Part shown: positions 7,116-34,542 of the stretch, one piece after another
Position numbering within the stretch: position 1 is the first letter of the stretch
Layout of the letters: every line of letters begins with the position of its first letter
Assembly (NCBI RefSeq): GCF_020745735.1
Contig: NC_083448.1
Span: forward strand, 8,864,006-8,928,005
Source of the DNA: Hemiscyllium ocellatum
Lineage: Eukaryota
Reading direction: 5' to 3'
DNA length: 64,000 nt
Made by a program: the position numbers and the translations under genes
Notes under the pieces: generated by a model
Told to the model about the DNA's origin: nothing
Seen by the model: the letters and a program-made list of their open reading frames with translations, nothing else
The model's database searches: none

Positions 7116-7205
7116 ACTGCTGGAAGAAAACCATATTTGAACAGTTCTACTTCTCCAGATATCAGTAGAACAACCAACCATTTGAGGGGGTACGTTCTAG
7201 ATGGC

Positions 7206-15117: not shown

Positions 15118-15519
15118 CTGAAATGCAAGGAAATCATTCATCACCAGCGATTCTTCACACAAAATACTTTTTTTTGGCGTGGAAGAGTGGTTGTCAGTGA
15201 GAAAATGAAATTTTCACTTTTTCAAACAGATCTGTTAACTGCAGACAAGCTTTTAAGGTCTTTTTGAAGTCTCCTGTAATTTTATCTGTTGTGTATGCAA
15301 GTTCTCAAACCTGATGACTGAAGAAAATACACTTATCTATAAAGGCGCATGTCAGACGTACGACGGATGAGTGCAATTCCAACAACACTCAAGATGCTCG
15401 ACACCATTCAGGACAAAGTAGCTTGACGGTCCTTCATTTTCTCCACCATCAACACTCAGCAGTAGGATGTACACTGCAGAAAATCAGAGGTCCTTGGACA
15501 GCACATTCCAAACCCACTA

Positions 15520-15728
15520 CAGGGGAACCTCTATTGTCTGAATTATCCAATTATCCGAAATTCGATTACTCGAAGACGTGTTTCCAACAGTGATCACGTC
15601 TTTTGTTCACAGTGATTAAACAGGCACAATGTCCAAATGACTGACCTCTCACCCTTTCTCTGGAGTTCTACAGAGGGGTGTACCCCAAACACCCCCCCCA
15701 TCTGATTCGGATAATCAAGTTTCCACCA
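15520..15728. mobile_element. Old pogo/Tigger-type MITE
   Basis: TA-flanked degenerate TIRs: caggggaacctctattgtctgaa and ttcggataatcaagtttccacca. Confidence 0.45.
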
Positions 15729-18128
15729 TACTGAGAATGGCTGTTCTAGATGATGGCAAAGGGGGCCATATGGGGCTCTGGCACATTTGAAGAGGGCCAC
15801 AGACTGAAAACTGTGAGGAGGGAAACTCAATGGTTTTTGTGGGGCCAGCGTAACCGAACAGATGAAATACCCAAGCAACCACTTTCATTGAAGTCAATAG
15901 TTTCCCTCCTCTTGATAATATCTTTCCAACAAACCTTTTGAATTTGGGACACCTAGTAAATTAATTGCTTAAGCTCCTGCCACACAGCATGACTGCAGAG
16001 TTAGTCACGAATCAGACTGCACTGGGTCAACGTATTCAATCAAGGTTTCGCTCATTCATTATCACCATACTTCATTATCCAAAGATCAGCATGGCTTGCT
16101 CGGTCTTTTTTATCCTTTCCTTCAATATCTCTCGTTGAAAGTGGAATCTGCAAGGTAGTTTCCTTGACAAAATCCGGGAACAGAATTGACATTGCAACAA
16201 GTGAAATCTGACTGTCACTATCTAATTTGGAGCCCAATATCATGAAACTTGCAGAAACGCACCAAGCTCAAGGATCTCATTGCCTGAAATTAAACATCAG
16301 GCCTAGTCTTTTTTAACTTTTGTCCAGTACGTCCGAACATTCAAGTTTTCTTGGTGTTCAATAAGAAATGATTTTCTGTTTGTGTCTGTTAGTATTGTAT
16401 CCGTTTGAATGGGGGCCCTGGAACCTGAAAAGAGCTGCTGGGGTTCATGGCCAAAAAAACAGTTGAGAATCACTGATCTAGAAGGACAAGGGCAGTAGAT
16501 GTATGGGAACACCATCTCCAAATTCACCTCCCACTACTCACAATCCTGTCTTGGAAATGTGCGGCTGCTCCTTCAGGGTCATCGGATCGAAATCCTGGAA
16601 ATTCCCTCCCTACAGGCATTGCGGGCCAACCTACAGCACATGGACTGCAGCAGTTCACTGTCACCTTAACAACACCAAGGGACAGGGAATAAATTTCCCA
16701 CAAACACCTGGAAAACATTGTTTCAATTCCTGAAATTCATTTCTGAAATGCGATTGGTACTTAATCATTTGATCAACATACTCTGTCATTTCATTCAAGT
16801 GTCACAAACTGAGCCAAATGTACAGCTGTCAACTAACATTAAGTGTTACAAAAGAGACAGGCAATATCACGGGACAAATGTGAACCTGGAGGGTCACAAT
16901 TAGTGCCTTTCAAACCTAAGCACAACAGATCAATGTTTTCTTCAATGGTTCATTGTGACCATCCCATTGTTGCATGTTGCAAGATAAACTTTGAAAAAAA
17001 AATGTAAACAGGAACTTATTACAATAGATTCTCAAGGTTTCTAATTATATTTGAGACTCTTACTCAAGTTGGTGCATTCAAAAAATGGTTGCAATACACC
17101 AGGAAAAAAGTTTGACTCACTTCCAAAGGAACAAAACATCCCACTGAATCAGTGAAATGACCATGTCTGCAAGTACATATCTCATGTCCATGTGTTTTTC
17201 CGTTAACTATAGTATATCAAAAATGTCAACAAACATTCAATGCAAAGAGTCCAAGGTACTTAGGTTTTACTGTCGCCACACCATCTTTCCTCATCCAAAT
17301 TGACCTCTTTAAACCTTTTATTCCATTTGCCCTCAAAGTGCTTGTCCTTCAACCAAATGGTTTGGTTCAAACAATCCTTGTGATATTTTGTTTCATAATC
17401 TTCACCAAGAGTGGCAAGAGGCTCCTTCCAAAATAGCTGTATCCTGGGAGTGAAGCAGCATCACCACTGGTCTCCTCAACTGATTCCCGTCAAAAGATGG
17501 CATTTTCAAAAAGCTAAGAGACTGTGCAGATATAAAGCAAATAATCATAAATACATTAGCTAAAATAGGCAGTGATGTTCTAATAACTGGATGATTCATA
17601 CCCCAAATAGTACAACAGCTACTACCTTCAAATTATGTCAAAGCCACATATTTCAGTGGTCCGATAAGGTTTGTAGCTGCAAAAAAAAAAGCCTGAAAAA
17701 AAATCGCAGAAGAGATTTCATAATTTATTGGAACCCCACAAAGAGGAGCAACACAAACTTAAATACAGTATTCAGTAGTTGTCCGCCAGGAGATAGTTCA
17801 CCAATGAAAAGGTAACAAAACCCTTGTTTAGCTAATCAATGATTAATGCCCTTCATTAGTTGTTAGGAAATGAAATTCAGCCTGGTCATTTCTGGGGTTA
17901 TAGGAATCAGAGGTTCTTGCTTCTCAACATGAATTGATTTTAATATTCTGTACTTGGATAGATAGAGAAGTCAAAATTCCTTGTTTGTTCTCATTGCTTT
18001 AATTCCCTCAGCAGGTGAGGTTAACATGAAAGCCTCTGCTTCTCAACCTCTCCCTTCATCTAAGCTGTGGTGACACTTGGATTAAATCATCAGTCATCTC
18101 TCTAACAAGAGTAGCAGCCCTATGATTT

Positions 18129-18253
18129 ATTCCTGATGAAGGGCTTTTGCCCAAAAGGTCAATTTCGCTTCTCTTTGGATGTTGCCTGAACTGCTGTGCT
18201 CTTCCAGCACCACTAATCCAGAATCTGGTTTCCAGCATCTGCAGTCGTTGTTT
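18129..18253 (+). mobile_element. Penelope-like pLTR fragment with decayed hammerhead motif
   Basis: attc-CTGATGA-agggcttttgccc-AAAA (GAAA lost by CpG decay); same family as the 44435 element. Confidence 0.7.
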
Positions 18254-19028
18254 GTATATCATGGTCTAGTAGGCCAATGACAACAGGATTTATCAGAATA
18301 CTGGTCATCTGAGAAGGATGAAGCCACACAAAATTGGTTCAAATGAAAACAGAATCACTGAAGATGGAAATCAAAAGACGTAATGATAACAAGAACGCCA
18401 CAGCTGCCCCAATATATGATAACGTCCGAAGAATTATTTGTCCTGGTGATGGCAAGCCAAAATGGTCAAGATGCTCACAGTTCGCAGCTAATGTCCATCA
18501 GAAAATAGAAGTGAAGTATTCGCAGTTGAGGCAATTAGTTGAAGTGACTTGACTAAGTTACACCATTACGAAATACAGCAAAAATCTTAGCCTTCAGAGG
18601 CTCCACATCTTCAAAATCAGGGTAAAAAAAATGAGTCTTATTAAGTTGTTTCCGCAATCCATGTTCACATGCACCACTTCCGATTGCAGACAACAAGATG
18701 TACCAAGTACATCAGAGGCTCCCTTTGTTGGATAGACCGCTCAAATAATAATATCCTCACCATTTATTGTGAAAGACAACATTTCAACAGGAAAATCTTC
18801 AACCTAACATCAAATGTTACATGAGGGGAAAGCGGCGAGAGATGGAAAAGAACGGCAATAGGGTTAAGGACGATAGCGATGAAAATTGACATGGGGGTGG
18901 GGGATGAAGAAAGAGGAGAAAGGAAACCGAGGCCTACAAGGCCCAAAGTTTCCAGAAAGGTAGAACCGAAAACAGGAAGAATGGACGAACTGGGCCAGAG
19001 TCAGGCACATCACCCGACCAATACTTAC

Positions 19029-19042
19029 AATAGGAAGCTCAT
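19029..19042 (-). CDS. MOB1A: MOB kinase activator 1A, coding exon 1 (MSFL-F)
   Basis: Minus strand reads ATGAGCTTCCTATT|gtaagt; the 14-nt exon is phase-compatible with exon 2 and lies in the CpG island. Confidence 0.9.
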
Positions 19043-20560
19043 TTTCTTCTAATCTGCTACACTCGGAAAAAGAAGCGGCGGGGGTTAAAGAGTAATCCGG
19101 AAAGACATCACAGTCCGGGCCAGTTTTAGGAGAAAAATTGTCGGAACCAACAACTACCAAGCTGTGAAAAAAAACTTAAACTCTCCTTCCCTAGACAGCC
19201 AAGTGTCGCGAGAACGACCTGACCGCGACACCATGCAAATCAGACCGAATGATTGACAGCGCTACAGACCAATCGACGGCTCAGCCACCGCCCAATAACG
19301 GCCCGTACGTCCTACAAACCAATGACCGGCGGTAAAGAGCGGGATAATCTGTAGACAAGCCCGCCCCTCCCCCATCCGCCGTTAACGGAAAAAACTCAGT
19401 TGTGGTCATTTTACACGATCGTCCTTTTGAATTCGGTAAGGCAAGGAATGTATTTCCCCTCTTAAAATCAAAGCCCGTGAAACATCACTGACGTATGCTT
19501 TCGTCGCTGTAGCCAATCAGAGTGGGCTGGTGCAGTTTTTTGAACGTAAATAGTTGAGCGCAAATGATTTAAAAAAATCAGAGGAGTAGCATCTTTGTTG
19601 TTTGCTTTCTGCCTGTCGTTTACTCGGTGCGTATGATTGATTTCGGACGAAGATTTTTAAAAGATGATGAGAGACGGGGTTGGGGGAGGGGAGGTCTGAC
19701 GGCACAATCCCGTTTATTTCCGGCGGATGACGTTAGTAGGCGCTGTCGTGCTGCTGAGGCGAGGAGGAGAGTCGCAGGTAAAGAGAGGGAGCGAAGAAAG
19801 CATCGCTTGTGAACGTTATCTTACCGCCGGTCCACCGTCAACTATCTGGCCCCTCTACAGGCGTTTCGATCCTGAAGCTATTCCGTACGCGTCTTCCTGT
19901 TTTATGATGGGAGTTGATATTTTAAGGCAGTTTTGGGGAGGGTGGTGGTGATGATATTGGAACACGAGGCCGTTGTGAAGCGCGGCCGCCATTTTACCCG
20001 CGTTCGTTGAGGGGGTGCGTTTGTTTTGTAATGGACGCTGCTGCCGGTTCCTTGGCGCCGTTGGGCTTCCCAGTTACTTCCGATCGACTTTCTTTATTTA
20101 TTTTCGAAGCCTGGCCTCTCATCTCGATCTATCTACGTCCCTCTTTCAGAAGAGAGAATAGCTGCGCGTCCGTAATCGGGCTCGAGGTTTGCTGGCACCC
20201 GGCGGAGTGAATCCGGGGAGTTTTAGTTGGTCCCCTTTGTCTCCGCCGTGGTCTTTAGTTGGTGTCTGCCCATCCTCTTCGTCCCGGGCTTGCCGCCACT
20301 TCGTTCTCGGAGGCCACGTTCCTCCATTCGGGGTCTTTGGCAGTGTTTCTTCACGTTTTCTTTTTTTTCCTCTCGTGCTACCCTGGCGTGGTCGAAATGC
20401 CATCTTCCCTTGTTTCTCGCGGTGTGTTAGCGCCCTGCGTTGGCAAGATCAGTGAAATCAATGACTTGAGGCAAGCCAAATGATTTGAGGACCCCCCCCC
20501 CCCCCACAAAAAAAACAAACCGCACGCCAGGGGGTGCGAGAAGATCACGCAGAACAAGCA
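19043..20560. promoter_or_regulatory. CpG island and bidirectional promoter for MOB1A (-) and the hnRNP H-like gene (+)
   Basis: High CpG density; CCAAT boxes at ~19269, 19292, 19319 and 19513; GC box ~19360; CRE half-sites; YY1 site CCGCCATTTT at 19986-19995; probable non-coding exon 1 of the hnRNP gene ending CAG|gtaaag at 19777. Confidence 0.85.
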
Positions 20561-21801
20561 ACTTGACGTTCTCACTCTACCTGGAATTGCAGTTCGTTGT
20601 TGCTTTGGATCATGTCACTTCTTTGCACGACCAAAATGTTTTTCTCGCCACTGATTTTGTTTTATTTATTGAATTAATGTGGCTGCAGACATTAAGGTTT
20701 TTTTTGTTCATTTTATTTATGCTTTATCTGCTTCTCTGACTCTGTCAGAGACAGAAACGACAGATGTAGGAATGCAGGGTAATCTAGCACGAGGCTAGAA
20801 GAACACAGCAAACTAGGAAGGATTGGGAGGTGAAGTCAATATTTTGGGTGTAACTGTTCTTCAGTGTTGACTTCTCCCCGTTATACGACCTGACTTGCTG
20901 TGTTCTTCCTTCTTGTGTATTTATCATTGTCTCAGTTGTCATTTACTACACATTCCCAGCTACTAGTGGACTACGGGCAATTGCTGTGGGTCTGGATGAA
21001 CATGTAGCCCAGACCAGTACGAATGGTAGATTTCTTTGCTGGAAAAATGATTGTGGTAGACCAGATGGTTTTATCTGATTGTCATACTGCATGAAAACAG
21101 ACCATTTATTCCAAGCAGTCCATTTGGAATATAATGCCAAATTAAATTACTGTCACCTGACCTATATCCCTCCAAACATTTCTTATTCATGTATTTATTT
21201 AAATGTCTGCATCCACCACTTCCTCTGGCAATATGTTCCCATGTCTTGAAATCCCACACGAGGGAAAAGCTGTTTACCTCATCTGTACCTAAGATTTTAT
21301 ACATTTCTAAAAGGTTACCAGTCAAGTTCCTACACTCCAGCAAAAAAATGCCCTCAATCCCTGATTCTTCTATTAATTCATCTTCCACCATCTGCCTTGG
21401 TGGGACTTAAATCGAGGTCCCCAAACATTAGCTGAATTTCTGGATTAATCATCTAGCAATAGTACCATGAGGCTATTGTGTTAAGATTGTGGTTTTCTAT
21501 GTTTGCAAAATAAATTCGTGTATGTGTTTGTGTATGCTAGAAAGTATTCCTTGGATTGCCATGGTGTTAGGATGGTAGTTTTGTAGTCATGGTAGTTTTT
21601 TTCCATGTGTTGTGATGCTTTTGAATTTTTAAGTATACCCATCTGAACACCCAACAAATCTAACTGTAAAATATTACAGTTAAGTATCCTTGCATTGAAA
21701 AGATAAAACCACCTTGCATTGTGTGCAAATATTTATAATTAATCTATTTTTGTATTGCTTTCAGGCTTTGTGAAGAGATCTGTGTGTTACAGGCAATTAC
21801 A

Positions 21802-21880
21802 ATGGATGAAGATTTTGTTGTCCGTGTCCGTGGACTTCCATGGTCTTGCACTGCTGATGAAGTGTTACGCTTCTTCTCAG
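21802..21880 (+). CDS. hnRNP H-family (HNRNPH3-like, three qRRMs) coding exon 1
   Basis: [26 protein letters not shown] |gttttg; start of qRRM1; acceptors at 21764 and 21792. Confidence 0.9.
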
Positions 21881-22209
21881 GTTTTGTGAATTCATCTCGA
21901 TGATAAAGCTTTACGGAAAAATAGAATTTTTAACTTGTGACTTTAAAGTTTGGATTTGATGTTTAGGGAATCACTTTCACAGTAACTCCATATAGTAATA
22001 GGTAAACTTGGGGTTTCTTGCATGAACTTGGGGTTCCTGAATCTTACTGCAGTGTGTTAAAACAGTTTTTGTCTCTGGGCACCATTTTAAGTACCTGAGA
22101 AGAACTGACTTGACACTATTCATACTTGAATTGCTGAATTTTTTTTATGTTTCTGTGCTATACATCTGACTCTTTCTTATTTGTTGGAGCATCATGTGAA
22201 CCAAGGCTC

Positions 22210-22503
22210 GGCGGCATGATGGCTAAGTGGTTAGCACTGCTGCCTCATAGCATCAGGGAACCAGGTTCAATTCCAGCCTCCAGTGACTGTCAGTTTCCTC
22301 TGGGTGCTCAGGTTTCCTTCCACAGTACAAAGATGTGCAGGTCAGGTGAATTGGCTGTACCAAATTGTCTATCATGGTGGTTAGATGCATTCGGCATGGG
22401 ACGTACAGAGTAATAGGGTAAGGGAATGGGTCTGGGTGGATTACTGTTCAGAGGGTCATTGTGGACTTGGGCCAAAATCCTGTTTCCACACTAGGGATTC
22501 TAT
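22210..22503 (+). mobile_element. HE1-like tRNA SINE
   Basis: tggctaagtggttagcactgctgcctca, B box ggttcaattcc, tail tgtttccacactagggattctat. Confidence 0.82.
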
Positions 22504-23388
22504 AGTGTTAAAATGAATTCGCCTGAAGTTGCAGTCTTGCCTATGGAAATCTGTTGTGGTGAGGAGCACCATAGAAGCTGCTGTTTTTCTGATTTTTTTA
22601 TATCATGGTCAAAGTTGTTTTTCCTTACTTCCTTATTGACATTGTCAGTGTCTTATATATTGTTTCCTTAAGCAAATGAGCCCTGGCTTATTTTGAGGAT
22701 CTGAACCTTCTATTGTTTTTTACTCCCTTTTTTTATTTTAAGAGACTTATCGTTTTCTTAGATTTGAATGATCAGCCCCAGTGACTGCATTCCAATTTAA
22801 GTCTATAATGGTGTCATATAGTACTTTTTTTTAGCAGTTTTGAGGACAAGGAATTTTACTTTTCCACTCATTTCAATTTGGTTAATCTCACCAGATTGTA
22901 ATCAAGTCTTTGAACTATCAGTTGACAATTTTTAGAAGTTAAGTATTGTTGGGTTTGCATGCTGAACTGAAATTGAACTAGTTCTGAAGTCTTGCTGTGT
23001 CACTGAATTACAAATAGCCAACATCAGAATGCAGCTGGATTCTGCCCAGCTGCTCGTCAGAAATCCTGTTGGCAAAGTTAAAAATTGAAATGATTTTGGA
23101 CTCTTGAGCTAATTGAAGACTATGAATGTGTGCCCTAATTCTCTAGGAAGATTTTGCTGTGTTTTGTCACATTAAGTAATCAATTGGAGATGCTGAAGGT
23201 AGTGATTGGTTTGCTGGAAGCTGACGTGTTAAGTGTCTCAAATGCAAGTGAAAAATGTGTTGTGCCATTAATTTTTTTTTGATCACCAATGCCTTTGCTG
23301 TTTTTGCATGTCCTGCTTCATATGCCATCACCCCACACCAATTGGGACAAGAGAAAAAATATCAGTTAATCATATGTGCTGCTTTTAG

Positions 23389-23544
23389 ATTGCAAGATAT
23401 TAAATGGAACTGCTGGAATACACTTCACCTATTTAAGAGAAGGCCGCCCAAGTGGTGAAGCCTTTGTTCAGCTGGAAAGTGCGGACGATGTAAAGCGTGC
23501 CCTTGCAAAAGACCGGGAAAGTATGGGCCATCGATACATTGAAG
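23389..23544 (+). CDS. hnRNP H3-like coding exon 2 (qRRM1)
   Basis: ttttag| [52 protein letters not shown] |gtgcgt; 156 nt. Confidence 0.95.
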
Positions 23545-24154
23545 GTGCGTGACATTTTAAACCATCGCTCAACGTTTGTTTATGTCGCAGGTTCTTGTAC
23601 CTTGTAGTAGTTGTAGGGGGAGTGTGCAGGCAGAAGAGGGAGAACTGAAATCAACAGCTTTTTATAGAAGAAACATTGAATACTGAAGTTCTGTGGCAAT
23701 AATCAACTTTTCCAGGATGTTCGTTTGTGCATTACTGTCTTCCACCCTGCTGATTCACATCAGTTCTCGGTTTACACTTCAAACAGACATGTTTCTACTG
23801 ACTCCTCCCAACCTTCCAATTCTAAACTCCTCAGCCCGATAAACCTCTATTCGTGTATCCCAAATTGGTAGCAAGCCTTTAGCTGCTGAGACTCTCGTCA
23901 TATTCTGGTCCAAAATACATAGAATGGTGAGAGCTGAAATTTTGAGATTGCTCCTGCTTAATAATGTTACTTTTGCTTCTCCTTTGTAGGAAGTTTAGTT
24001 GAATACACAATGACTGAACTGGCAATCGACAACTTCTGACACTTAATAATAGAATTAGCTGATGTTTGTAGTGGAGTATGGTTTTCAGTCCTCGTGACCA
24101 TGTTCTAATAGAGAGCGTTGCAGAATATATCAATAAGCAAGAGACTATTAAGGT

Positions 24155-24470
24155 TCAAGGTTTGTGCGAAGATTTGTAGCTCGGGTGCTCGTTGTTGTGG
24201 TTCTGTTCGCCGAGCTGGAAGTTTTTGTTGCAAACGTTTCGTCCCCTGGCTAGGAGACATCATCAGTGCTCTGGAGCCTCCTGCGAAGCGCTTCTTTGAT
24301 GTTTCTTCCGGTATTTATAGTGGTCTGTCCTTGCCGCTTCCACTATAAATACCGGAAGAAACATCAAAGAAGCGCTTCGCAGGAGGCTCCAGAGCACTGA
24401 TGATGTCTCCTAGCCAGGGGACGAAACGTTTGCAACAAAAACTTCCAGCTCGGCGAACAGAACCACAACA
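24155..24470. mobile_element. Young Penelope-derived insertion: perfect 131-bp inverted repeat carrying hammerhead motifs
   Basis: Arms 24193-24323 and 24340-24470 are exact reverse complements; TSD gactattaaggt at 24143-24154 and 24471-24482. Confidence 0.9.
24394..24433 (+). ncRNA. Minimal type I hammerhead ribozyme motif (mirror copy on the minus strand in the left arm)
   Basis: GCA-CUGAUGA-U-GUCUCCU(AGCC)AGGGGAC-GAA-ACGU-U-UGC: helix I GCA/UGC, 7-bp helix II, palindromic ACGU helix III. Confidence 0.7.
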
Positions 24471-24971
24471 GACTATTAAGGTGACACAAACACACAATGT
24501 GCTGGAGGAACCCAGTTTTGACTGCATCTCAGGAGATTGAGATGCATCATGTTTTCAGTTTAATTTCAAGAACCAGCTCTGTCAACTGTTTAGTTCTCTC
24601 CAGATGCTGCCTGACTTCAAATTTATCCAGCCCGTTCTGTTTATTTCAGATTTCCAATATTTTGCTCTTAGACTTTTAAGGGTGAATGGGAAAATTTCAA
24701 TAAATAAATATCTGCTAAAATATTACCAGATAAGATGTTGATATTAATGTCAAACACTTCAGTAGTCTGGACAGTATTGAAAAATGCAGACAGGTGCAAT
24801 TTATGGGTTTTTTTTGTGAGGTAATCTGCTAGACGTGTACTCAAGTATTATTATTGCAATGCAGTGCATGGCATGAGAAATGACTTTGTCCATGTTGTCT
24901 TCTATTGGTATTTGGCAAATAATTGTACAGCATGTTCGTTTTTGTTAGTATTTGCAAACTTGTGTTCACAG

Positions 24972-25115
24972 TGTTTGAGACTAAAGCCACTGAAATGGAC
25001 TGGGCACTAAAACATGCTAACCCTAACCAAACTGAGTCCACGAGCGATGGAACAGTGCGCCTCAGGGGTTTACCCTTTGGCTGCAGTAAAGAGGAAATTT
25101 TGCAGTTTTTCACAG
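24972..25115 (+). CDS. hnRNP H3-like coding exon 3
   Basis: cacag| [48 protein letters not shown] |gtacat; 144 nt. Confidence 0.95.
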
Positions 25116-28100
25116 GTACATGTTAATTTATCACTTTCTCCAATACTGGAACCAAATATTTGGGCTTGTGGATCTGATGTGGGTAGGGGGCACTAATTGT
25201 AATGTGGATTACTTTATTTAAGGGTGGATTTGTGTAGCCCATCCAATGGGTTTTGTATTTGGTGTTAGTGTACACAGCTAATGAATTCTATTTCTTTTGT
25301 CGATGCAGGGGATGGAATAGCAAAATGATTATGACCTAGAGTGGCACATAGAATTGGGCACAAGGTTTTTTTTTGTTTTTAAAAGGATGCTTTAATGAAA
25401 ACAATGATTTAAAATATCTGTTTTAAAGCTTAGCATAGTGACTTAGAATAAAGGTAACTTTGATTAAGACATGCCATTTGTTTTCAACATCACCGTAAAG
25501 AAAATAGTGTTGGGGATTTTGATAGTGGTTTTTGACAAAGGACATTAGTGAGCTTCATGGTCCTGGCAAAGCTTTGTTGCTCGAAGTCACCAAACTAATT
25601 TTGTTGAAAGATGAACTTTTATGGGGCGTAGGTTACTTTTGATGACAAAGCCAGCAAAATTTACTTTTTACCTTTTTTTTTCAAAAAGATACTTTGGGCC
25701 TGTGACTTTATCAGTCCTTTTTGGCTTTTCACTTTTAAGACTGAATTGCTTTTTCTTCCAAAGAAGATAATCCTTGAGTCCAATCTTGTGAGCCAGTAAT
25801 AACAAAATTAGTTGTTCTTGTTAACTTTGGAAGGAATAGTTTAGAATATTAACTTCACCATGCACAGTTGCTAATTGGAAAATGTTAACTGCAGCAGTTA
25901 ACTCAAAATCTTAACTCTAAATATGTTTGGAGTTCTTTCAAATATTAAGGTTTTTATGGGCTGAAATTTAGCTCTGGTAATAATTCATAATGGTATATCG
26001 TACTAGTTATGTGACTTCTGAGCAGTGGTGCTGGTATTCAAAACTATTCCTTTAGTGTTTGTGCACAGTTGAGTGAAATTTCTGGATTCAGGCTATACAG
26101 TCATGCTGTAATTTGGCATTTGTTGTGTTGCACCATGGAGTGGTGGATGCAGGTATGTGCTTGCCATTCCAATGGAGTTTCCAAACCCACCTTTTCCAGT
26201 GTTGGGATAATTTCACCAAAGGCTGGTCACCTCTTTGATACAGAGGATTTGTGACCTGGGTTATTGGGGCTCGAGCCATTGCTTTTATGGCTGTTAACTG
26301 CCTGCCTGCATTTGGCTTCTCACGCCTTCAAATGGGATTACCCACAAAAGGGATGAAACCCTCTAACAGGTGTCTCTCCCTTTTTTTGAATTGGGTTATT
26401 TTATTTCCATAACCGTTTTTACTGATATACAAAATGTAAAGATTTTTAAGTTGTGCAACTGATGTCTCAGCACTACAATTCACTGTAGTTACTGGCTGTG
26501 AAGAATTTATAACTGGACCAGAAGTTTACATTAATCAGAAAACAAAATTCCTCATTATTCATCCAATTAACATTTATATTATGGTTCAATATAATGCCCC
26601 TTACTATGCTTTGTCTCTTGATTTTTAAAAACTGCATTCTCCATTTTTCCGGACGCATGTGCACCTCCAAATGAAGGGACATTTCATGTATGTGTTTACA
26701 AGGCTACTTCTCATGCATGAAACTTCATGATGAGCATTGGCAAGATTTTTGACCACTGCAAGGATCTGTGAGCAAAATGCAGTCCTTGTCGCACTAATCC
26801 TGTCAGCATGGTCAGAGAGCAAATAAGGACACTGCCTGTGATGCATTATTCACTTCGAGTAGCATTTCAAAAAGTACTGGTTTCCCAGAACTCTGACACT
26901 GAATGACTTTGGATTCAGCCAGCTGATGCACTATAGATCTGCCATAGATTTGTAGTATCAGGAGATAGATCGACAATTGAATTTGTGTTGTCGTAAATGT
27001 TTCTGTCTGGACTAACTGAAAGTGCTAGAAAAGTCAGGCTTCATATTGAATAAGTTAACTTCAGTGATGATATAATGCAGTCACCTAGCTGTTGGGACCA
27101 GCAACTGGTTTGATACTCTTATGGTTTCTTCACAGTCAGTAACTTGCAGCATGTATTATAAATGGACTCTTTTATTTTAAGACCATGCTAAATTGGTGTA
27201 TTGATGCAGAGTTTGCTTAGTGAATGCACAGGCTGCATATTGCTAATTACCTAAAGCAAAAGGATCCTCAGTTTAGTGTAATACTGGAGCTTGATGCTCT
27301 TTACTATTTGTGCAGTTTAAACAGTCAATCACAAGTATTGGATTCTATCACTATGCCTAAGATTTACTTGGAGGAAAGTAGTTAAAGTTTCTGCAATCAG
27401 TGTGTAGTTCCTTAATTGCATGCCGATTCATGCATTTCTTCTAAAATTGTTGCATTATTTGTTTTAATTAAGTAAGCTAAGTGTTGTAGGCTGTTAATCA
27501 GTAATTATGTCAAATGATATGATATGGGCTGTTTCCACCTAGTAACTGGCACTGAAAAGGTTCTGTTTCACCAGTTTGTGCTGACTCTTAACAGAGTAAG
27601 TGGGGCTTCATTCATTTGCTTGCAAATAAGGCCCTAACTTTTGATGTGAAGTGGAGAAAACAGCAATTGTTTTTCTTCATTAACAAACTGCATGAAACTC
27701 TCGTCACTGTTCCTTTGTACATTCAAGATAAGAATTGTGCCCAGATACTTAATTTTTTTTTAAAATCCTGGTGACACAAGTGAACAGAAATGTAGTTATT
27801 TATTTCTGAAGTTTTGTCAACACGATTGTTACTTTAGGTAGCACAAATCCGTGAACAAGGACAAATTAATCAGGTCTTAGGTTATGCAGTTTGAACTTTA
27901 ATGTTTATTGGCAGTCATCTTGGTTTCTCTTGTAGGTGTAAGGCTGAAACAATTTGAGTATGACAGTAATGACCTACTGATTGTGGTCATGATTAAATAA
28001 TTTCTTACAATTTAATTCATGTTTTTAATATTAGTTTAAAACAATGTTGTCCTGCTCCTTTGCAAGTGTTGGTTTATATAAATGTGCAAACATATCTAAC

Positions 28101-28272
28101 TTTTTTTTTGTTGGATCTTTGCTTTATTTAAAAAGCATTCTGCAGCCATTGATTTCATTAGTCAATTCTGACATCAGTACTCAATATTTATATTCTATAG
28201 TATGTGCATGAGTAGGAATGTTTCAATTTTTAATATTGTTCCCCTTGTGGGGTATTTGTCCTTGGGTTGAAG

Positions 28273-28411
28273 GGTTGGAAATCGTGCCAAATGGGATAAC
28301 ATTGCCGGTGGACTACCAGGGGAGAAGCACGGGGGAAGCCTTCGTGCAGTTTGCATCAAAGGAGATAGCTGAAAAAGCACTGGGGAAACACAAGGAAAGA
28401 ATAGGGCACAG
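28273..28411 (+). CDS. hnRNP H3-like coding exon 4 (139-nt autoregulated cassette exon)
   Basis: ttgggttgaag| [47 protein letters not shown] |gtggggatgg. Confidence 0.96.
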
Positions 28412-30399
28412 GTGGGGATGGACGGAAGGGTGGCTCATACGTCTTTAAGCCCACTTGTTCAGGTTGCAGAATTCATCTGTTCTTGCAGAGAAAATTGTCG
28501 AACCTCCCACATGCCATTGGAAACCTGAGTGGGGACTCAACTGATTGTTCTAAATTGTCAAAATGATGTCTTATACTGCTGGGCCTTCTATATGTTACTT
28601 CAAAATTAAATTGATTGAATGATAAGCCAGGGCAATGTTTGCCCTTCAGTCCCAACTTTGTAAAGATTGATTTTTTAGAGGGCCTTGCAGTTAGGATTAT
28701 CGTGGATGTAAATGTTTTAAAATTTGAATTGTTTCAATTTGACTCAGTTTGAGTAATTTGTTCAAACATATTGATTTGGATTAATTAAATTGCATATCCA
28801 AAGTGCAGTTCCAAATTAAATTGTAACATTCACAAAGCAATGTCGCAATTGTGGGACATTTTCTCCCCCGCCCCACTTCATTAATTTATCACTTTGTGCG
28901 TCAAGCACACAGCATTCCATGTGTTTGTCTTCATCTCACCAAATGGGAAGATGAAGACTACTTGGTTTGCTGAGTTTTTTAACTGTTCTGTTATTCCAGT
29001 AGAAAAGTATTGCACTTGAAATCAGTATTAAGATTCGCGTTCAGAAGCGTCGGTATTAATAGCTAATTGGTGAAATTTTGTCTGAAATGCTTGTGTTGTA
29101 TCTCTGATATCTTGCATTAAACTTGGTATTTAAAATGTCTGACTTGATGCCTTATTGCATGTAGCTTGAAATTTTATCTCATTCCTCGTTTTGGAGAGAA
29201 CAGTACTAGATATTTAAAATAGTTCAGGTCCCGTGACTGCGTCACCTTGTGTTTTTTATTTTGTTTTGTTTTCTTTGCAGTTTCCCACCAGACCTTAACT
29301 ACTTTGAGCCCCCGGTATTGGATGGCACTTGGGGTTGGTGGATTCCAGAATTCTGGAAACGATGCCAAGATTGCGCTCTGTAGTTACTCATTTGCGAAGA
29401 TGTGTTCCTTTAATCAAATATTTCTGGAGTTGAGGAACTGTACGAGTTGCAATAATAGGATTTATATTCTGATGATGTTTCTGACCATATAGTGGCTACT
29501 TGTAGTCAGGTTTCTGGGAGTCATTACAAATCAGATGGTCACAGTAATCACTGGAACTTAGATGGAATATGCACATGACAAATACAATTTAGACCAAATT
29601 GCATGACACACATTGTGTTCTGTGTTCTTGGATAGTTCACAAATTTCACTATTGGAACCAGATGCAGGTGAATAGTTCATTATTGGCATCAGGTTCATGA
29701 ACACCAGACTATGAAACAACCTGCAGTTACTTCATGTAACTGGCTTCTATGTTTCAAATTTTGCTACTGCAAGTCAGACATTTTATATCTAAATGGCAGA
29801 TTATTTCCAAAATTAAATAGCTGCTATGTTTGAAAAATTGACTATGCTTATTTTTTGTTTAGATAATGTAGACAGATTGCTCTGGTGAAAAGGTAATTAG
29901 ATCCATTTTCAGACGTGCCAGACTGATCATTGAGTGAATTTCAGGGTCCCATCCAGTTATAATGGATAAGACTGCTGTTTTAAATATACTCGCTCATTAA
30001 TAATAGAGATACACCAGGATGCATTTGAAAATTTTGCTTTGTGTATGAATTCAGTTTGTGTAAATGTGTTTTTAAAGTTGCTCCCAAAACCTGTCCCTGA
30101 GCTATGAAGCACATCCTTTGTCTTCAAGAGTCATGCCGTCAACCTTGACACTTCAGCCTGCTTCCAAAATAAATGATGAAAACATCTCTCTTTGGTGTCT
30201 GTGAATGTGGGCTTTTTTTTCCTCTTTTGAAGACCCAATTTCAAATTGCTTATTCTGTTCCAGGATGTGTGTTCTGTTTGAGTGGTTGAATTTTGATGTC
30301 TTTTCACCAGAGCAATCTGCAACCATAATACCAACATGTTGAGTAGTGAACTGAAATAGCTGAAGGCAAGATGTAAATATATCAATTGTGGCTGTTTAG

Positions 30400-30590
30400 G
30401 TATATTGAAATCTTCAGGAGCAGCAGAGGTGAGATTCGAACTTTCCATGATCCTCCAAGAAGGTTAATGGGTCAGCGACCAGGACCCTATGACAGACCAA
30501 TGGGGGGTGGAAGAAGTGGCTACGGTGGTCCAGGGCCCATGAGAGGAGACATGTTTGACCGTGCACGTAGAGGATCTGGCTACGGTGGAG
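30400..30590 (+). CDS. hnRNP H3-like coding exon 5 (GYR region, RPGPY PY-NLS)
   Basis: tttag| [63 protein letters not shown] |gtaaga; 191 nt. Confidence 0.95.
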
Positions 30591-30781
30591 GTAAGAGGAG
30601 AATGGGCAGTTTTCGCTCAATTTTTATGAACAGTTGGGCGTTGCACTAATGCATTGCATTTTTCAGACGTATGAATCAATCATCGTAATGTGCCTCTAAC
30701 TTGAGGCATGTAGTTGAGAGGTTGGAATTAAAGTTTGATCTATCTTTTGGTTGAAGCCAGCCTGTCTCTTTCTCTCCATAG

Positions 30782-30880
30782 GTTATGGCAACTTTGATGA
30801 TTATGGTTATAATGATAACTATGGTTATGGGCGTGATGCATACGGACACAATTCCAGAGCTGGTGCAATGATGGATAGAG
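30782..30880 (+). CDS. hnRNP H3-like coding exon 6
   Basis: ccatag| GYGNFDDYGYNDNYGYGRDAYGHNSRAGAMMDR |gtaggg; 99 nt. Confidence 0.88.
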
Positions 30881-31096
30881 GTAGGGCATCTTTGCTTAAG
30901 AGAAAGAAAGGCGTTTGGCTGAAATTTGGTTAGTGCTTTTAATCAATGGTGTCTTTGCAGCAAAGCAGAAGTTCTTTACTTTGTGCAATTCATTTATTAG
31001 TCTAATTCAAATTGTCTAGAACTTGTGATATGTTAATGTTGGATAACTTGATCATGGAGATATATTCAGTTACATACATGATTGTTCTTGCTCTAG

Positions 31097-31218
31097 CTAT
31101 GGGCAGTCGTGGTTATGGTGGAGCAGGTGATGCTGGTCCGTTGTTTCAGAATGGTACAGGTCATTACGTACATATGAGGGGATTACCTTTCAGAGCTTCA
31201 GAAGGAGATGTTGCTGAT
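31097..31218 (+). CDS. hnRNP H3-like coding exon 7 (start of qRRM3)
   Basis: ctctag| [41 protein letters not shown] |gtaagt; 122 nt. Confidence 0.93.
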
Positions 31219-31599
31219 GTAAGTGTGACTTTTGAGGAATTTGCTCTACGTTTTGGGGAGGGGAGGTTGTTAAGGGCTTATTTTGTTCAGTTCAAATAGA
31301 AACAATTTGAATATTGCATGACATGATGGATGACAGTTTAGTTCTTGTGCTAGCTTTTCATGTGACAGACTGAAGCCCATGATGATGAAAATAGAAGCAT
31401 AATTTCTTGTTTTTGTCTTTGGTTCCTAATGTGAATGTTACACAGTACAAACCTTTACGAAATTATTGCTTGCTTTTGGACCCATTGTGCTTTCATTAAA
31501 TGTTGCAAAACAAATGGTTATTTTATTTTGTTTGAGGGGAAATACCTCTAATTTACTTTTGTTCATCTGTTTACAACTGTACTATTACATTCCTTGCAG

Positions 31600-31735
31600 T
31601 TCTTTTCACCGCTGATTCCTGTAAAGATAAACTTTGAATATGGCTCTGATGGTCGGCTTACTGGAGAGGCTGATGTTGAGTTTGCCACACATGAAGATGC
31701 AGTTGCTGCTATGTCGAAAGATAAAGCTCATATGC
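31600..31735 (+). CDS. hnRNP H3-like coding exon 8 (qRRM3)
   Basis: ttgcag| [45 protein letters not shown] |gtaagt; 136 nt. Confidence 0.95.
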
Positions 31736-32328
31736 GTAAGTAGTTCAGTGTCATAGGGGTACAGCACGGAAGCAGACTCTTTGGTTCGACTTGATTTTAG
31801 CATTTGTCAACAGGTCAGTTTTTCAACTTCAGTTTTCTACCAAGAGCTTCATTGTACATGCTGAGTTTGGATCTGCTAACTTTATACAGATTAGATAAAG
31901 TAAGGACAAATTAAGCATTTGGACTTTGATTTCAAAGCTTTCGATGTGACCAATTCACCGAAAGTACTCTGGTAAAAACAACACGCATGCAACTGCAAGA
32001 ACAATTAAACCAAAACTCAAGTTTTATTCATAACGCAGTCCTTTTAAGTCTTCTTTTGTATTGAAACTCATTTTTAGCTCCCATTGACATGTTTCATATT
32101 GTTACTTTGCCAGATGGCTAAGGCCTAATCCTAGAATTGCCTTTTCTGACACTAAATCTTTTGATGCTTCCAGTTCACAAGTTGAAGGGATTATCTTTGC
32201 ATCTTTTGAAGTTCTGTGGAATTTTGGGAGTTAATTGACTTTAGTTTTTCCTCTGTTTGAGATTGTTCATTAATGTCAAAATGCGTGATTGCAAATTGTG
32301 TCCTTACTAACTGAAATTTACTACTTAG

Positions 32329-32445
32329 AACACAGATACATCGAATTGTTCCTGGATTCCACTGCAAACATGGGAGCTGGGCCTGGTGGCTATGGAAATC
32401 ACAGAATGGGTGCAATGGGCATGGGTATGGACCATTATGCAGCAG
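32329..32445 (+). CDS. hnRNP H3-like coding exon 9
   Basis: TACTAAC branch point at 32305-32311; cttag| QHRYIELFLDSTANMGAGPGGYGNHRMGAMGMGMDHYAA |gtaatt; 117 nt. Confidence 0.9.
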
Positions 32446-32906
32446 GTAATTTTCTCAAATTATGGCTGTCCATCTGACACTGTTTCTAGTTTGCTTTGTG
32501 TCCATGAGTTGATTTTACAGATTTTAGATGGGCCTATATACGCATGTTCGTTAACACTTGTTTGTTCAGCAATGTGTAGGCCAAAAGCTAGAGGATATTG
32601 CTGAGCAGGTCATACCCTCCTCGCACACGCGCGCGCGCACACTATTGCAGGGTGTTTTTTTTTTTAAATCCCTTCAACCAATAAGTGCTATCATGCTCCA
32701 CTCCACCATCTGCTGCCTATTGCAAAGAGTACCTGATCTCAATCCTTCATGTAAAGTAGTTTAGTGCAATATTGAAGCTTAGTGATTTGCAAGCTATACT
32801 GGTGAATGTAAACAAATTAGTGCTTTGTTTAAGCAGGGGTTGCTGCTATGGGGTGGGGGGTGGAAGAATGATAGATCTAAGTGCGCATTTTTGTGTTGAT
32901 ACACAG

Positions 32907-33011
32907 GAACTCAAGGAGGCTATGCTCATAACAGTCAGGCTATGGCCAATAGCTATGGCAATATGGGCAATAGCTATGGATATGGAAATCCTGGAAACAC
33001 ACGTGGATTTG
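32907..33011 (+). CDS. hnRNP H3-like coding exon 10 (Gly/Tyr-rich)
   Basis: acacag| GTQGGYAHNSQAMANSYGNMGNSYGYGNPGNTRGF |gtaagt; 105 nt, frame-consistent. Confidence 0.85.
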
Positions 33012-33288
33012 GTAAGTGCAACTGTATGTTATTAAAACTTTGGTTCCAACTTTTGGATGAGTTGCTTTATATGGGAAATGAAGAGCTTTAGGAGAATTTA
33101 TCACAGTTGACATGTCAATAGCTAACTTGATATGTGAAATGAATAATTGGCAACAATTCATTTAGAGGTTAATTTTCTTTTTACACAAGATTAGGATGCA
33201 AGCTGAATGTAATATTGGAACTTGAAAGTTTGTTAATACGAATTTTAAGTAATGATTGTTCTAAAACCTTATTCTCTTTAAATTGCAG

Positions 33289-33386
33289 GTTATGGTGGTA
33301 TGGGAGGAGGTGGATATTCAGGCAATCCAAATCAGCACATGGGAATGGGCAACCTCGATACGAGCATGGCTGGATGGAGAATGTAA
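33289..33386 (+). CDS. hnRNP H3-like last coding exon
   Basis: ttgcag| GYGGMGGGGYSGNPNQHMGMGNLDTSMAGWRM*; the GWRM end resembles HNRNPH3 GWRGMY; total CDS 1386 nt. Confidence 0.85.
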
Positions 33387-34536
33387 ACTTAATTATGCTC
33401 ATCAGGCCATGAGCCACCAGCTTCAAGAACCCAAACTCTGCCACAATTTCATAATGGATGACCAATGCAGCAGCATTGCTGTTTGTTTTTTCGTCTGAAC
33501 CAAAAGCAGTAATATTTTTACTAATAGAGCTACTTTGCAATTCTTTTTATTTTTTTACATGTTTTGGTGTAAACCTAGAAAGCCCATGTTGTCCAGGCTT
33601 GGGTAACTTTGTTTGAAGCTTCGGGTATTAGACCTGATGGAGAGTTTAAAACTTGTTTTGATAATTTTGGACTTGAGTGAATGTGGCAAATCAAAGTAAA
33701 CATCTCGTTCAAAGCCGCCTTTTGATGAATTCTTAATTATTTTAACTAAACTAAATCTAACATTCAATCACCTTTTACAAATATTCTGAGCAAGTTGTGT
33801 GATTGTGAATACCTTTTTTACTTGGGTGATACCATTTTAAAAATGAAACCAGGAGAGATTTTGCTTCTGTTTCTATGGTCTTTACCAGAGGATCACCAAC
33901 AAAATGTCCACACTTTGTTCAATTTGAGGTTGAATGTCACATGTAGAAATGTGCGGTTATGGACATCTGGTGAACATCTTTTACTAATGTCTTTATAAAC
34001 AATTTCTGTCCCATTCATTCGCCAATTAGACCACAACTGCACATACTGTTCCAAGTTCAAATTGTACGTCTTTTGGTTACCCTGTTCACTTCTGTTGCTC
34101 CCTCTAGCTAATTTTAACAGCTACTTGCGAGGTTCTCAGTTGGCATTTGTTTGTCTTCTGGAATGCAGATATAGGGTGTTACAACAGTGTTGAGCTGCCA
34201 GTTCCTCCTGCTTGTATCCTTGAGCGTTGCTATTGGAAATCCAAGCAAACGTTTTCTTTGGCAGTTGCTGTTGTTTTTTTTTAACTATGTCTGGTTCACA
34301 TCGTTTTTAACCTTTTAGATTCTTAATTTCTTGACTGTTAGCAATGTAGTTTTACAAATAAGAAGTGTACCTTGGTACCTTTTTTTCCTGAAAGGTGGTT
34401 TTTTTTTGGTTGCCATGCTTTGTTCAGTGGGACATATTGACTTTGACTTTGACAATTGAATGTGCAGCTTCTGAAACCTGTACTTTTTTCAGCATATGTG
34501 AAAGATGACTTACTGTACATTTCTAATGGTGAATAT

Positions 34537-34542
34537 AATAAA
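34537..34542 (+). terminator. Probable polyadenylation signal of the hnRNP gene (a second AATAAA at 34823)
   Basis: AATAAA after a U-rich 3' UTR, with an upstream TGTA element. Confidence 0.55.

What the first reader, a model, noticed from the sequence alone, without database searches (positions are those of the whole stretch)
19640..34542. hnRNP H-family gene between MOB1A and MTHFD2: candidate fourth WGD paralogue lost in mammals
Seen: an intact 11-exon, 461-aa hnRNP H gene head-to-head with MOB1A and upstream of MTHFD2. Established: human MOB1A and MTHFD2 are neighbours at 2p13 with no hnRNP gene between them. The intron-containing family members lie in the matching paralogon: HNRNPH1 beside RUFY1 (5q35), HNRNPH3 beside RUFY2 (10q21), and GRSF1 between RUFY3 and MOB1B (4q13). 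Inference: this is the missing fourth ohnologue, sister to HNRNPH3, mirroring the divergent GRSF1-MOB1B arrangement. It would be retained in cartilaginous fish and deleted in the mammalian lineage.
Basis: partly seen in the sequence, partly recalled or inferred. Interest (0 to 1): 0.8.

Follow-up and report, generated by a model that had tools for sequence, protein, structure and literature searches.

The report
Shark-only hnRNP H paralogue beside MOB1A
This shark locus carries an intact extra member of the hnRNP H family of splicing regulators, wedged between MOB1A and MTHFD2; it is an ancient duplicate found in every cartilaginous fish sampled and in no bony vertebrate, humans included.

Summary
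An 11-coding-exon, 461-aa hnRNP H-type gene lies on the + strand (CDS 21802-33386, AATAAA at 34537). It is head-to-head with MOB1A across a CpG island and upstream of MTHFD2.

The protein is 95-96% identical to RefSeq "hnRNP H3-like" of whale shark and zebra shark. It falls in a clade of cartilaginous fishes only (100/100 support; sharks, rays, skate, chimaera). That clade is separate from the true H3 clade (PBLD-H3-RUFY synteny in chimaera, shark and bowfin) and from the H1 clade (H1-RUFY synteny).

The same Mob1/H3-like/MTHFD2-type order occurs in the elephant shark. Catshark and skate show the head-to-head Mob1. The lamprey H gene is also head-to-head with a Mob1 gene. dN/dS between shark and skate is about 0.14.

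So the gene is an ancient paralogue that arose before the split between cartilaginous and bony fishes. It sits in the 2p13-type paralogon, as a fourth ohnologue beside H1, H3 and GRSF1 would.

- "Sister to H3" is unresolved (AU p 0.31 against 0.41).
- No orthologue is annotated in any bony vertebrate, so the loss is not specific to mammals.

GRSF1 sequences could not be fetched, so a GRSF1 sister relationship is untested. The gene is already auto-annotated; this reading of its history was not found in the literature searched.

The parts
19727..19762 (+). Part of the 5' exon of the hnRNP H3-like gene (H3L).
   Evidence: It encodes MTLVGAVVLLRR, 12/12 identical to the N-terminus of whale-shark H3-like isoform X1 P0232. 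It lies in the CpG island.
19201..20400 (.). CpG island between the divergent MOB1A and H3L genes; likely a shared bidirectional promoter.
   Evidence: CpG observed/expected is 0.96-1.39 and GC is 0.41-0.56 in 200-bp windows. Promoter function is inferred.
21802..21880 (+). H3L coding exon 1: ATG and the start of qRRM1.
   Evidence: Collinear with P0234.
23389..23544 (+). H3L coding exon 2: the rest of qRRM1.
   Evidence: 103.2 bits to human hnRNP H qRRM1 in the PDB. Splice sites.
24972..25115 (+). H3L coding exon 3: linker and the start of qRRM2.
28273..28411 (+). H3L coding exon 4: the core of qRRM2.
   Evidence: 104.7 bits to human hnRNP H in the PDB.
30400..30590 (+). H3L coding exon 5: the end of qRRM2, the RPGPYDRP motif and Gly/Tyr/Arg-rich linker.
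   Evidence: Used as the query.
30782..30880 (+). H3L coding exon 6: Gly/Tyr-rich linker.
31097..31218 (+). H3L coding exon 7: the start of qRRM3.
   Evidence: No in-frame AG is available for the 13-aa extension seen in whale-shark and zebra-shark isoforms.
31600..31735 (+). H3L coding exon 8: the core of qRRM3.
   Evidence: 66.5 bits to hnRNP H', 65.8 to hnRNP F and 58.3 to GRSF1 in the PDB.
32329..32445 (+). H3L coding exon 9: the end of qRRM3 and Gly/Met-rich tail.
32907..33011 (+). H3L coding exon 10: Gly/Tyr/Asn-rich tail.
33289..33386 (+). H3L coding exon 11. The protein ends ...MAGWRM, followed by a TAA stop.
34537..34542 (+). AATAAA polyadenylation signal, the likely end of the 3' UTR.
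   Evidence: Its use is inferred.
145..19042 (-). MOB1A-type gene. ATG at 19042 with donor GTAAGT; exons at 14949-15110 and 145-306. Its 3' end runs off the window. Introns carry LINE-type reverse-transcriptase ORFs.
45891..62877 (+). MTHFD2-type gene. Exons seen at 45891-46079, about 51246-51437, about 52545-52650, 57378-57524 and about 62.7-62.9 kb. The first exon was not mapped.

Best explanation
This is a functional third nuclear hnRNP H-type gene of cartilaginous fishes, named 'hnRNP H3-like' by RefSeq and called H3L here.

It most likely arose in the early vertebrate genome duplications from an ancestral H gene that lay tail-to-tail with a RUFY gene and head-to-head with a MOB1 gene. H1, H3 and, by inference, GRSF1 arose from the same ancestor.

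The copies then lost different neighbours:
- The H1 and H3 copies kept RUFY and lost MOB1.
- The GRSF1 copy kept both.
- The H3L copy kept MOB1A. H3L itself was later lost on the bony-vertebrate stem, which leaves MOB1A next to MTHFD2 in mammals.

How the protein probably works (inferred from family membership): it is a nuclear G-tract RNA-binding regulator of splicing and polyadenylation. It has three quasi-RRMs, Gly/Tyr-rich linkers and an RPGPYDRP (PY-type) import motif. It has no mitochondrial presequence. It is probably transcribed from a CpG-island promoter shared with MOB1A.
For: Shown:
- The gene is intact, with canonical splice sites, and is collinear with RefSeq models.
- All three qRRMs match their positional counterparts in human H/F. 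Pfam finds three RRM stretches and no zf-RNPHF in the zebra-shark orthologue.
- The first five intron positions match those of the shark H1 gene, so this is not a retrocopy.
- dN/dS is 0.14-0.15 against the skate orthologue over 444 codons.
- The H3L clade has 100/100 support. It holds only cartilaginous fishes, chimaera included. It is separate from H3 (98-99/95-96; cartilaginous plus bony fishes) and from H1 (100/99-100).
- Forcing H3L to join shark H3 costs 16 lnL units, AU p = 0.032.
- Single species carry H3L, H3 and H1 on different contigs.
- Synteny:
  - Elephant shark: Mob1(-)/H3L(+)/THF_DHG_CYH(+).
  - Catshark and skate: Mob1(-)/H3L(+).
  - Lamprey: its H gene is head-to-head with Mob1.
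  - H3: next to PBLD and/or RUFY in chimaera, shark and bowfin.
  - H1: next to RUFY in sawfish and bowfin.
- No bony-vertebrate orthologue appears among the hits.

From the literature:
- A list of the genes in a 1.3-Mb cattle interval includes SLC4A5, MOB1A, MTHFD2, BOLA3, TET3 and DGUOK and names no HNRNP gene (PMC8505495).
- A cattle figure legend names RUFY3, GRSF1, MOB1B and DCK in that order (bioRxiv 10.1101/2021.01.08.425854).
- GRSF1 is reported only from vertebrates (PMC6028389).
Against: - The order of branching among H3L, H3 and H1 is unresolved.
- With conserved columns only, the AU test no longer formally rejects H3L + shark H3 (p = 0.07).
- GRSF1 and invertebrate outgroups are missing from the trees. 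'Fourth member of one quartet' therefore rests on synteny and published knowledge, not on a tree.
- Absence from bony vertebrates rests on annotated proteins only. The MOB1A-MTHFD2 interval of gar, bichir, coelacanth and others was not searched at the DNA level.
- The MOB1A vs MOB1B and MTHFD2 vs MTHFD2L assignments rest on small score differences to human proteins.
- There is no expression evidence for this genome.
- RNA binding, nuclear localisation and promoter sharing are inferred.
Confidence: 0.75

Rival explanations
1. H3L is a duplicate of H3 specific to cartilaginous fishes. It arose after the split from bony vertebrates, diverged quickly, and happens to sit beside MOB1A.
For: H3L shares H3-type features. 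It has no zf-RNPHF, an [23 protein letters not shown] linker, a GYGGAGDA motif and a ...GWRM C-terminus (the comparison with human H3 is from memory). RefSeq names it 'H3-like'. With conserved columns only, AU p = 0.07 does not formally reject H3L + shark H3.
Against: H3 of cartilaginous and bony fishes forms a clade that excludes H3L, at 97-99% bootstrap in three analyses. AU p = 0.032 on the fuller alignment. A late duplicate would have had to land head-to-head with MOB1, in exactly the arrangement seen for the lamprey H gene and for GRSF1-MOB1B in mammals. The lamprey protein scores best against H3L (561 bits), above shark H3 (537 bits).
Confidence: 0.07
2. The ohnologue reading is right, and H3L is specifically the second-round twin of H3.
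For: The shared H3-type sequence features listed above. The AU test does not reject H3L + all H3 (p 0.31, delta lnL 2.3).
Against: H1 and H3 both keep a tail-to-tail RUFY neighbour and lack MOB1. H3L and GRSF1 both keep a head-to-head MOB1 (and this window). The quick tree gave H1+H3 at 88 SH-aLRT with H3L outside. H1+H3 is equally unrejected (p 0.41). The shared features may simply be ancestral.
Confidence: 0.25
3. An orthologue survives in some bony vertebrates, for example early-branching ray-finned or lobe-finned fishes. It would be unannotated, fragmentary or a pseudogene, so the loss would be patchy rather than a single stem event.
For: Only annotated proteins of 0.55-1.75 times the query length were searched. 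No DNA-level search of the MOB1A-MTHFD2 interval in bony vertebrates was possible with these tools.
Against: Bichir relatives, sturgeon, gar, bowfin, lungfish and amphibians are all present in the hit lists with their H1 and H3 genes, and none has a third type. No HNRNP gene is named in the cattle interval.
Confidence: 0.12

Closest known systems
HNRNPH3 (hnRNP 2H9), the PBLD-HNRNPH3-RUFY2 gene of jawed vertebrates
   Same: Both belong to the qRRM family. Both lack the RNPHF zinc finger. The qRRM2-linker sequence and Gly/Tyr-rich tail are similar. Identity to shark H3 is about 65%. RefSeq calls this gene 'H3-like'.
   Different: The clades are separate and the chromosomal neighbourhoods differ: MOB1A/MTHFD2 here, against PBLD/RUFY for H3. 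Cartilaginous fishes have both genes. Human H3 lacks qRRM1 (from memory), whereas this protein has all three qRRMs, as fish and amphibian H3 proteins also do.
HNRNPH1 and its derivatives H2 and F
   Same: The architecture is the same: three qRRMs with the same intron positions. The qRRM1 and qRRM2 exons score 103-105 bits to human hnRNP H. The RPGPYDRP motif is conserved.
   Different: H1-type proteins carry zf-RNPHF (PF08080), which H3L lacks. H1 forms a separate clade (100/99-100), and H2 and two unnamed F-like representatives nest inside it. H1 lies next to RUFY.
GRSF1 (RUFY3-GRSF1-MOB1B at human 4q13)
   Same: GRSF1 is also a qRRM protein and is also adjacent to a MOB1 gene, according to the cattle gene order. 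That I recall the human genes as divergent is from memory. This makes GRSF1 the positional counterpart of H3L. The H3L qRRM3 exon scores 58 bits to GRSF1 against 66 bits to H'.
   Different: GRSF1 is mitochondrial and has an N-terminal extension (PMC6028389). H3L starts only a few residues before qRRM1 and keeps Gly/Tyr-rich nuclear-type linkers. The H3L qRRM1 exon scores 45 bits to GRSF1 against 103 bits to H. The phylogenetic relationship was not tested.
Lamprey hnRNP H/F gene (P0271, Petromyzon marinus)
   Same: It is head-to-head with a 216-aa Mob1 gene. Its best non-self match is H3L (561 bits). It has three qRRMs and no PF08080 domain on record.
   Different: The four cyclostome sequences form their own clade outside the three jawed-vertebrate clades (100/99). 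One-to-one orthology to H3L is not shown.

Membership tests
hnRNP H/F (quasi-RRM) family | Three quasi-RRM domains in the H-type order | tested here: met
   Each qRRM exon hits the positionally matching qRRM of human H/F in the PDB: 103.2, 104.7 and 66.5 bits. Pfam RRM_1 matches three stretches in the 95%-identical orthologue P0234.
hnRNP H/F (quasi-RRM) family | Conserved loop motifs used for G-tract binding: RGLP[WF], GEA[FD]V and HRYIE[VIL]F in each qRRM | tested here: met
   All three motifs are present in all three domains of the translated model. Their role in G-tract binding comes from the hnRNP F structures cited in PMC6028389.
hnRNP H/F (quasi-RRM) family | Binds G-run RNA and regulates splicing | not testable with these tools
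   Needs a binding assay, CLIP or a knock-down.
HNRNPH3 orthologue group | Nests inside the jawed-vertebrate H3 clade | tested here: not met
   The H3 clade (cartilaginous plus bony fishes) excludes H3L at 99/95, 98/96 and 97/92.
HNRNPH3 orthologue group | PBLD-H3-RUFY2 neighbourhood | tested here: not met
   The window has MOB1A and MTHFD2 as neighbours. True H3 has PBLD and/or RUFY in elephant shark, epaulette shark and bowfin.
HNRNPH1 group (including H2 and F) | RNPHF zinc finger (PF08080) between qRRM2 and qRRM3, and membership of the H1 clade | tested here: not met
   PF08080 is absent in P0234 but hit in shark H1 (below the Pfam cut-off) and in gibbon hnRNP H (above it). The H1 clade excludes H3L at 100/99-100.
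GRSF1 group | N-terminal mitochondrial targeting extension | tested here: not met
   The protein begins [14 protein letters not shown], directly at qRRM1. No targeting predictor was run.
GRSF1 group | Clusters with GRSF1 in a tree | not tested
   No GRSF1 sequence could be obtained.
Vertebrate whole-genome-duplication ohnologue set (H1, H3, GRSF1, H3L) | The duplication predates the split between cartilaginous and bony fishes | tested here: met
   H3L lies outside both the H1 and H3 clades, each of which holds cartilaginous and bony fishes. AU for the late-duplication alternative is p = 0.032 and p = 0.07.
Vertebrate whole-genome-duplication ohnologue set (H1, H3, GRSF1, H3L) | The copies lie in paralogous blocks with paralogous neighbours | tested here: met
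   H1-RUFY, H3-RUFY, H3L-MOB1A and lamprey H-MOB1 adjacency. RUFY3-GRSF1-MOB1B-DCK against SLC4A5-MOB1A-MTHFD2-DGUOK in cattle comes from the literature.
Vertebrate whole-genome-duplication ohnologue set (H1, H3, GRSF1, H3L) | The duplication postdates the split from invertebrate chordates, and the shark chromosome belongs to the matching ancestral linkage group | not tested
   No invertebrate sequences and no chromosome-scale data were available here.

The most novel reading that the evidence does not exclude
H3L is the second-round twin of GRSF1 and the direct positional heir of the ancestral MOB1-linked H gene, the arrangement still seen in lamprey. It would be the nuclear copy that kept the ancestral role, while its twin moved into mitochondria. 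Cartilaginous fishes would then be the only living animals that keep both halves of the pair. That would date GRSF1's move into mitochondria and show what it started from.
Probability: 0.35. Interest if true: 0.6.

Novelty: new member of a known kind. Interest (0 to 1): 0.45.

Why it matters
It adds a fourth lineage to a well-studied family of RNA-binding proteins (hnRNP H1/H2/F, H3 and GRSF1) that is usually described from mammals alone.

It allows a coherent reconstruction of the ancestral RUFY-H-MOB1 block and of how its copies lost different neighbours.

It is also a clean example of an ohnologue kept for more than 400 million years under purifying selection in cartilaginous fishes but lost in bony vertebrates.

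For GRSF1 biology it offers a possible nuclear sister gene. Comparing the two would help show how a nuclear G-tract binder became a mitochondrial G-quadruplex factor.

The surprise is limited. Ohnologues retained only in cartilaginous fishes are a known class, and the gene is already auto-annotated as 'H3-like' in RefSeq.

Tried and rejected
- The whole-library HMMER search with exon 5 returned mostly short fragments. Only P0001, a sturgeon H3 with an internal duplication, was usable, as a stepping-stone query.
- The look-up of encoding contigs failed for products that were not the longest isoform (P0174, P0220). I solved this by listing cluster members.
- Two loci came back without DNA.
- RNA evidence failed. 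The look-up of sequencing runs listed no run on record as RNA.
- Earlier notes of this scan had nothing on RUFY, GRSF1 or MOB1, so I could not check whether this very genome has separate H3 and H1 loci. Its closest relatives do: whale shark has H3L and H3 clusters, zebra shark has H3L and H1-like, and epaulette shark has H3.
- GRSF1 and invertebrate outgroup sequences could not be brought in by reference.
- Rfam found no family at gathering score in 19-35 kb.
- Literature searches for an earlier description of this paralogue found none.
- Rejected readings:
  - A retrocopy: the gene has introns at the same positions as H1.
  - A relocated H3 orthologue: true H3 exists elsewhere in the same species.
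  - An hnRNP F or H2 orthologue: those nest in the H1 clade.

Full report
**The thing itself**

Reading frames in 19-35 kb show a string of hnRNP H-type exons on the + strand. With splice sites added, they form eleven coding exons, all with GT-AG introns. The ORF is 1386 nt and encodes 461 aa, from the ATG at 21802 to the TAA at 33384-33386.

The first coding exon has its own acceptor just upstream of the ATG, so there is at least one 5' exon. Positions 19727-19762 encode MTLVGAVVLLRR.

The model is collinear with the RefSeq zebra-shark protein P0234 (462 aa): 95% identity and a single 1-aa gap. So the exon boundaries agree with an independent annotation of a close relative.

**The neighbours**

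Upstream, on the - strand, lies a MOB1 gene.
- Its ATG is at 19042 (ATGAGCTTCCTATT followed by GTAAGT).
- Further exons lie at 14949-15110 and 145-306. Its 3' end runs off the window.
- Both exons score a little higher to human MOB1A than to MOB1B (103.2 vs 100.6 bits and 96.2 vs 92.6 bits). One exon is 49/49 identical to MOB1A.

Downstream, on the + strand, lies an MTHFD2-type gene. Two of its exons score higher to MTHFD2 than to MTHFD2L (88.3 vs 77.3 bits and 76.7 vs 70.4 bits).

These margins are modest. They agree with each other and with the MOB1A-MTHFD2 adjacency known from mammals.

A CpG island (observed/expected 0.96-1.39) fills about 19.2-20.4 kb, between the two divergent genes. A shared bidirectional promoter is the natural inference.

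**What the protein is**

- Each of the three qRRM exons hits the positionally matching qRRM of human hnRNP H/F in the PDB: 103.2, 104.7 and 66.5 bits.
- The loop motifs RGLP[WF], GEA[FD]V and HRYIE[VIL]F are present in all three domains.
- The linker keeps QRPGPYDRP and Gly/Tyr/Arg-rich stretches.
- The protein starts directly at qRRM1, with no N-terminal extension of the GRSF1 kind.
- Pfam finds three RRM stretches and no RNPHF zinc finger in the 95%-identical orthologue. Shark H1 and gibbon hnRNP H do hit that zinc finger; the shark hit is below the Pfam cut-off.
- The first five intron positions coincide with those of the zebra-shark H1-like gene. The gene is therefore a DNA-level paralogue, not a retrocopy.

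**Relatives**

A stepping-stone search, followed by a search with the electric-ray orthologue, showed where the protein belongs.

- It belongs to a group variously auto-named 'H3-like', 'H-like' or 'H2-like'. Members come from electric ray, sawfish, stingray, devil ray, skate, whale shark, catshark, sawshark and elephant shark (755-1055 bits).
- The next hits, at 604 bits and below, are the 'H3' proteins of cartilaginous fishes. After those come their 'H1, like' proteins, and the H1 and H3 proteins of bony vertebrates.
- No bony vertebrate falls in the gap.
- The window protein is 96% identical to whale shark and 95% to zebra shark, 85-86% to catshark and elephant shark overall, and about 65% to shark H3.
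- Single species carry the different types on different contigs. Elephant shark carries H3L, H3 and H1; whale shark and catshark carry H3L and H3.

**Trees**

A careful IQ-TREE analysis (51 rows, 458 columns) gives three strongly supported clades:
- H3L, 100/100, cartilaginous fishes only.
- H1, 100/100, made of cartilaginous-fish H1 (100/99) plus bony-vertebrate H1 (97/95).
- H3, 99/95, made of cartilaginous-fish H3 (100/95) plus bony-vertebrate H3 (100/97).

Adding two lampreys and two hagfishes gives a cyclostome clade outside all three (100/99). The three clades remain an unresolved trichotomy. Keeping only columns filled in at least 90% of rows gives the same picture, with H3 at 97/92.

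AU tests:

| Constraint | Delta lnL | p (AU) |
|---|---|---|
| H3L + cartilaginous-fish H3 (late duplication) | 16.0 | 0.032 |
| Same, conserved columns only | 13.0 | 0.07 |
| H1 + H3, H3L outside | 1.3 | 0.41 |

So the duplication that gave H3L predates the split between cartilaginous and bony fishes. Its partner among the paralogues is not resolved.

H2, and two unnamed representatives that I recognise as F-like, nest inside tetrapod H1. H3L is therefore not a misnamed F or H2.

**Synteny**

| Gene and species | Arrangement found |
|---|---|
| H3L, elephant shark | Mob1(-) / H3L(+) / THF_DHG_CYH(+), the order in this window |
| H3L, catshark | Mob1(-) head-to-head with H3L(+) |
| H3L, little skate | Mob1(-) head-to-head with H3L(+) |
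| H gene, sea lamprey | head-to-head with a 216-aa Mob1 gene |
| H3, elephant shark | head-to-head with a PhzC-PhzF (PBLD-type) gene |
| H3, epaulette shark | tail-to-tail with a RUN+FYVE (RUFY) gene |
| H3, bowfin | Dna2 / PBLD(-) / H3(+) / RUFY(-) |
| H1, sawfish | tail-to-tail with a RUFY gene |
| H1, bowfin | dNK(-) / H1(+) / RUFY(-) |

The bowfin H3 arrangement is, from memory, the human 10q21 arrangement.

Published cattle gene lists complete the picture. One interval contains SLC4A5, MOB1A, MTHFD2, BOLA3, TET3 and DGUOK and names no HNRNP gene (PMC8505495). Another gives the order RUFY3, GRSF1, MOB1B, DCK (bioRxiv 10.1101/2021.01.08.425854).

The simplest reconstruction is an ancestral block of RUFY, H and MOB1, possibly with a deoxynucleoside kinase gene nearby. 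It was copied in the early vertebrate duplications and then thinned differently in each copy.

A late, lineage-specific duplicate of H3 would have had to recreate the MOB1 head-to-head arrangement by chance. Synteny therefore supports the tree independently of it.

**Selection**

Against the little-skate orthologue, 444 aligned codons give dN 0.11, dS 0.75-0.78 and dN/dS 0.14-0.15. Together with about 85% identity to the chimaera protein, this shows long-term purifying selection on a functional gene.

**How it most likely works**

Shown: intact coding capacity; conserved qRRM motifs and linkers; constraint; and a CpG island shared with MOB1A.

Inferred from the family: the protein is imported into the nucleus through the PY-type motif, binds G-runs in pre-mRNA with its qRRMs, and modulates alternative splicing and polyadenylation alongside H1 and H3. 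Nothing here suggests a mitochondrial role.

**Comparison with what is known, and novelty**

The gene is already present in RefSeq and UniProt as an automatically named 'H3-like' protein. Its existence is therefore not new.

I found no paper that treats it as a distinct paralogue or ohnologue. The whale-shark and elephant-shark papers that discuss genes lost in bony vertebrates do not mention hnRNP. Pietras et al. report GRSF1 as vertebrate-specific, which fits an origin in the vertebrate duplications.

I file H3L as a new member (subfamily) of a known kind.

**What remains open**

- Whether H3L pairs with GRSF1, H3 or H1.
- Whether exon relics survive in any bony vertebrate.
- Whether the gene is expressed in this species as modelled.

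The pairing of neighbours hints that H3L is GRSF1's twin: H1 and H3 both sit next to RUFY, while H3L and GRSF1 both sit next to MOB1. I give that reading about 0.35.

Noticed in passing
window 24118-24527: A palindromic insertion lies in intron 2 of the H3L gene. ORFs on the two strands encode the same peptides (for example ...CGSVRRAGSFCCKRFVPWLGDIISALEPPAKRFF...). Rfam found no family at gathering score anywhere in 19-35 kb. A laxer E-value search was not run.
   Followed up: partly
window 582-3560 and 9712-12581: LINE-type reverse-transcriptase and endonuclease ORFs lie inside MOB1A introns, among them a 421-aa RT ORF at 887-2152 on the - strand and broken pieces on the + strand.
   Followed up: no
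window 44411-45463: Inverted copies encode the same peptide (...AGQAASKEQENRRFGHKP.FRNEESVSSRLR): 44411-44593 on the + strand and 45257-45463 on the - strand. They flank a Pro-rich 217-aa ORF just upstream of MTHFD2 coding exon 2. This looks like a repeat element with inverted ends.
   Followed up: no
window 31058-31096; P0235 residues 270-282: Whale-shark and zebra-shark isoforms carry a 13-aa Cys/His-rich extension of exon 7 (DIYRCVTEHYCHL). In the window the matching stretch reads [13 protein letters not shown], and no AG lies in the right frame. This species probably cannot make that isoform.
   Followed up: partly
L007 (Amia ocellicauda) 1-7206: A deoxynucleoside-kinase (dNK) gene lies head-to-head with bowfin H1. 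DCK lies beside MOB1B and DGUOK lies near MOB1A in cattle. A dNK gene may therefore have belonged to the ancestral block.
   Followed up: no
L003 (Petromyzon marinus) 1-19836: The lamprey hnRNP H/F gene is head-to-head with a Mob1 gene. Its best match among jawed-vertebrate proteins is the H3-like group.
   Followed up: partly
P0001 (Acipenser sinensis): This sturgeon H3 model, the representative of its 50%-identity cluster, contains an internal duplication of the qRRM2-linker segment. It is labelled UNVERIFIED_CONTAM and is probably an assembly or annotation artefact.
   Followed up: no
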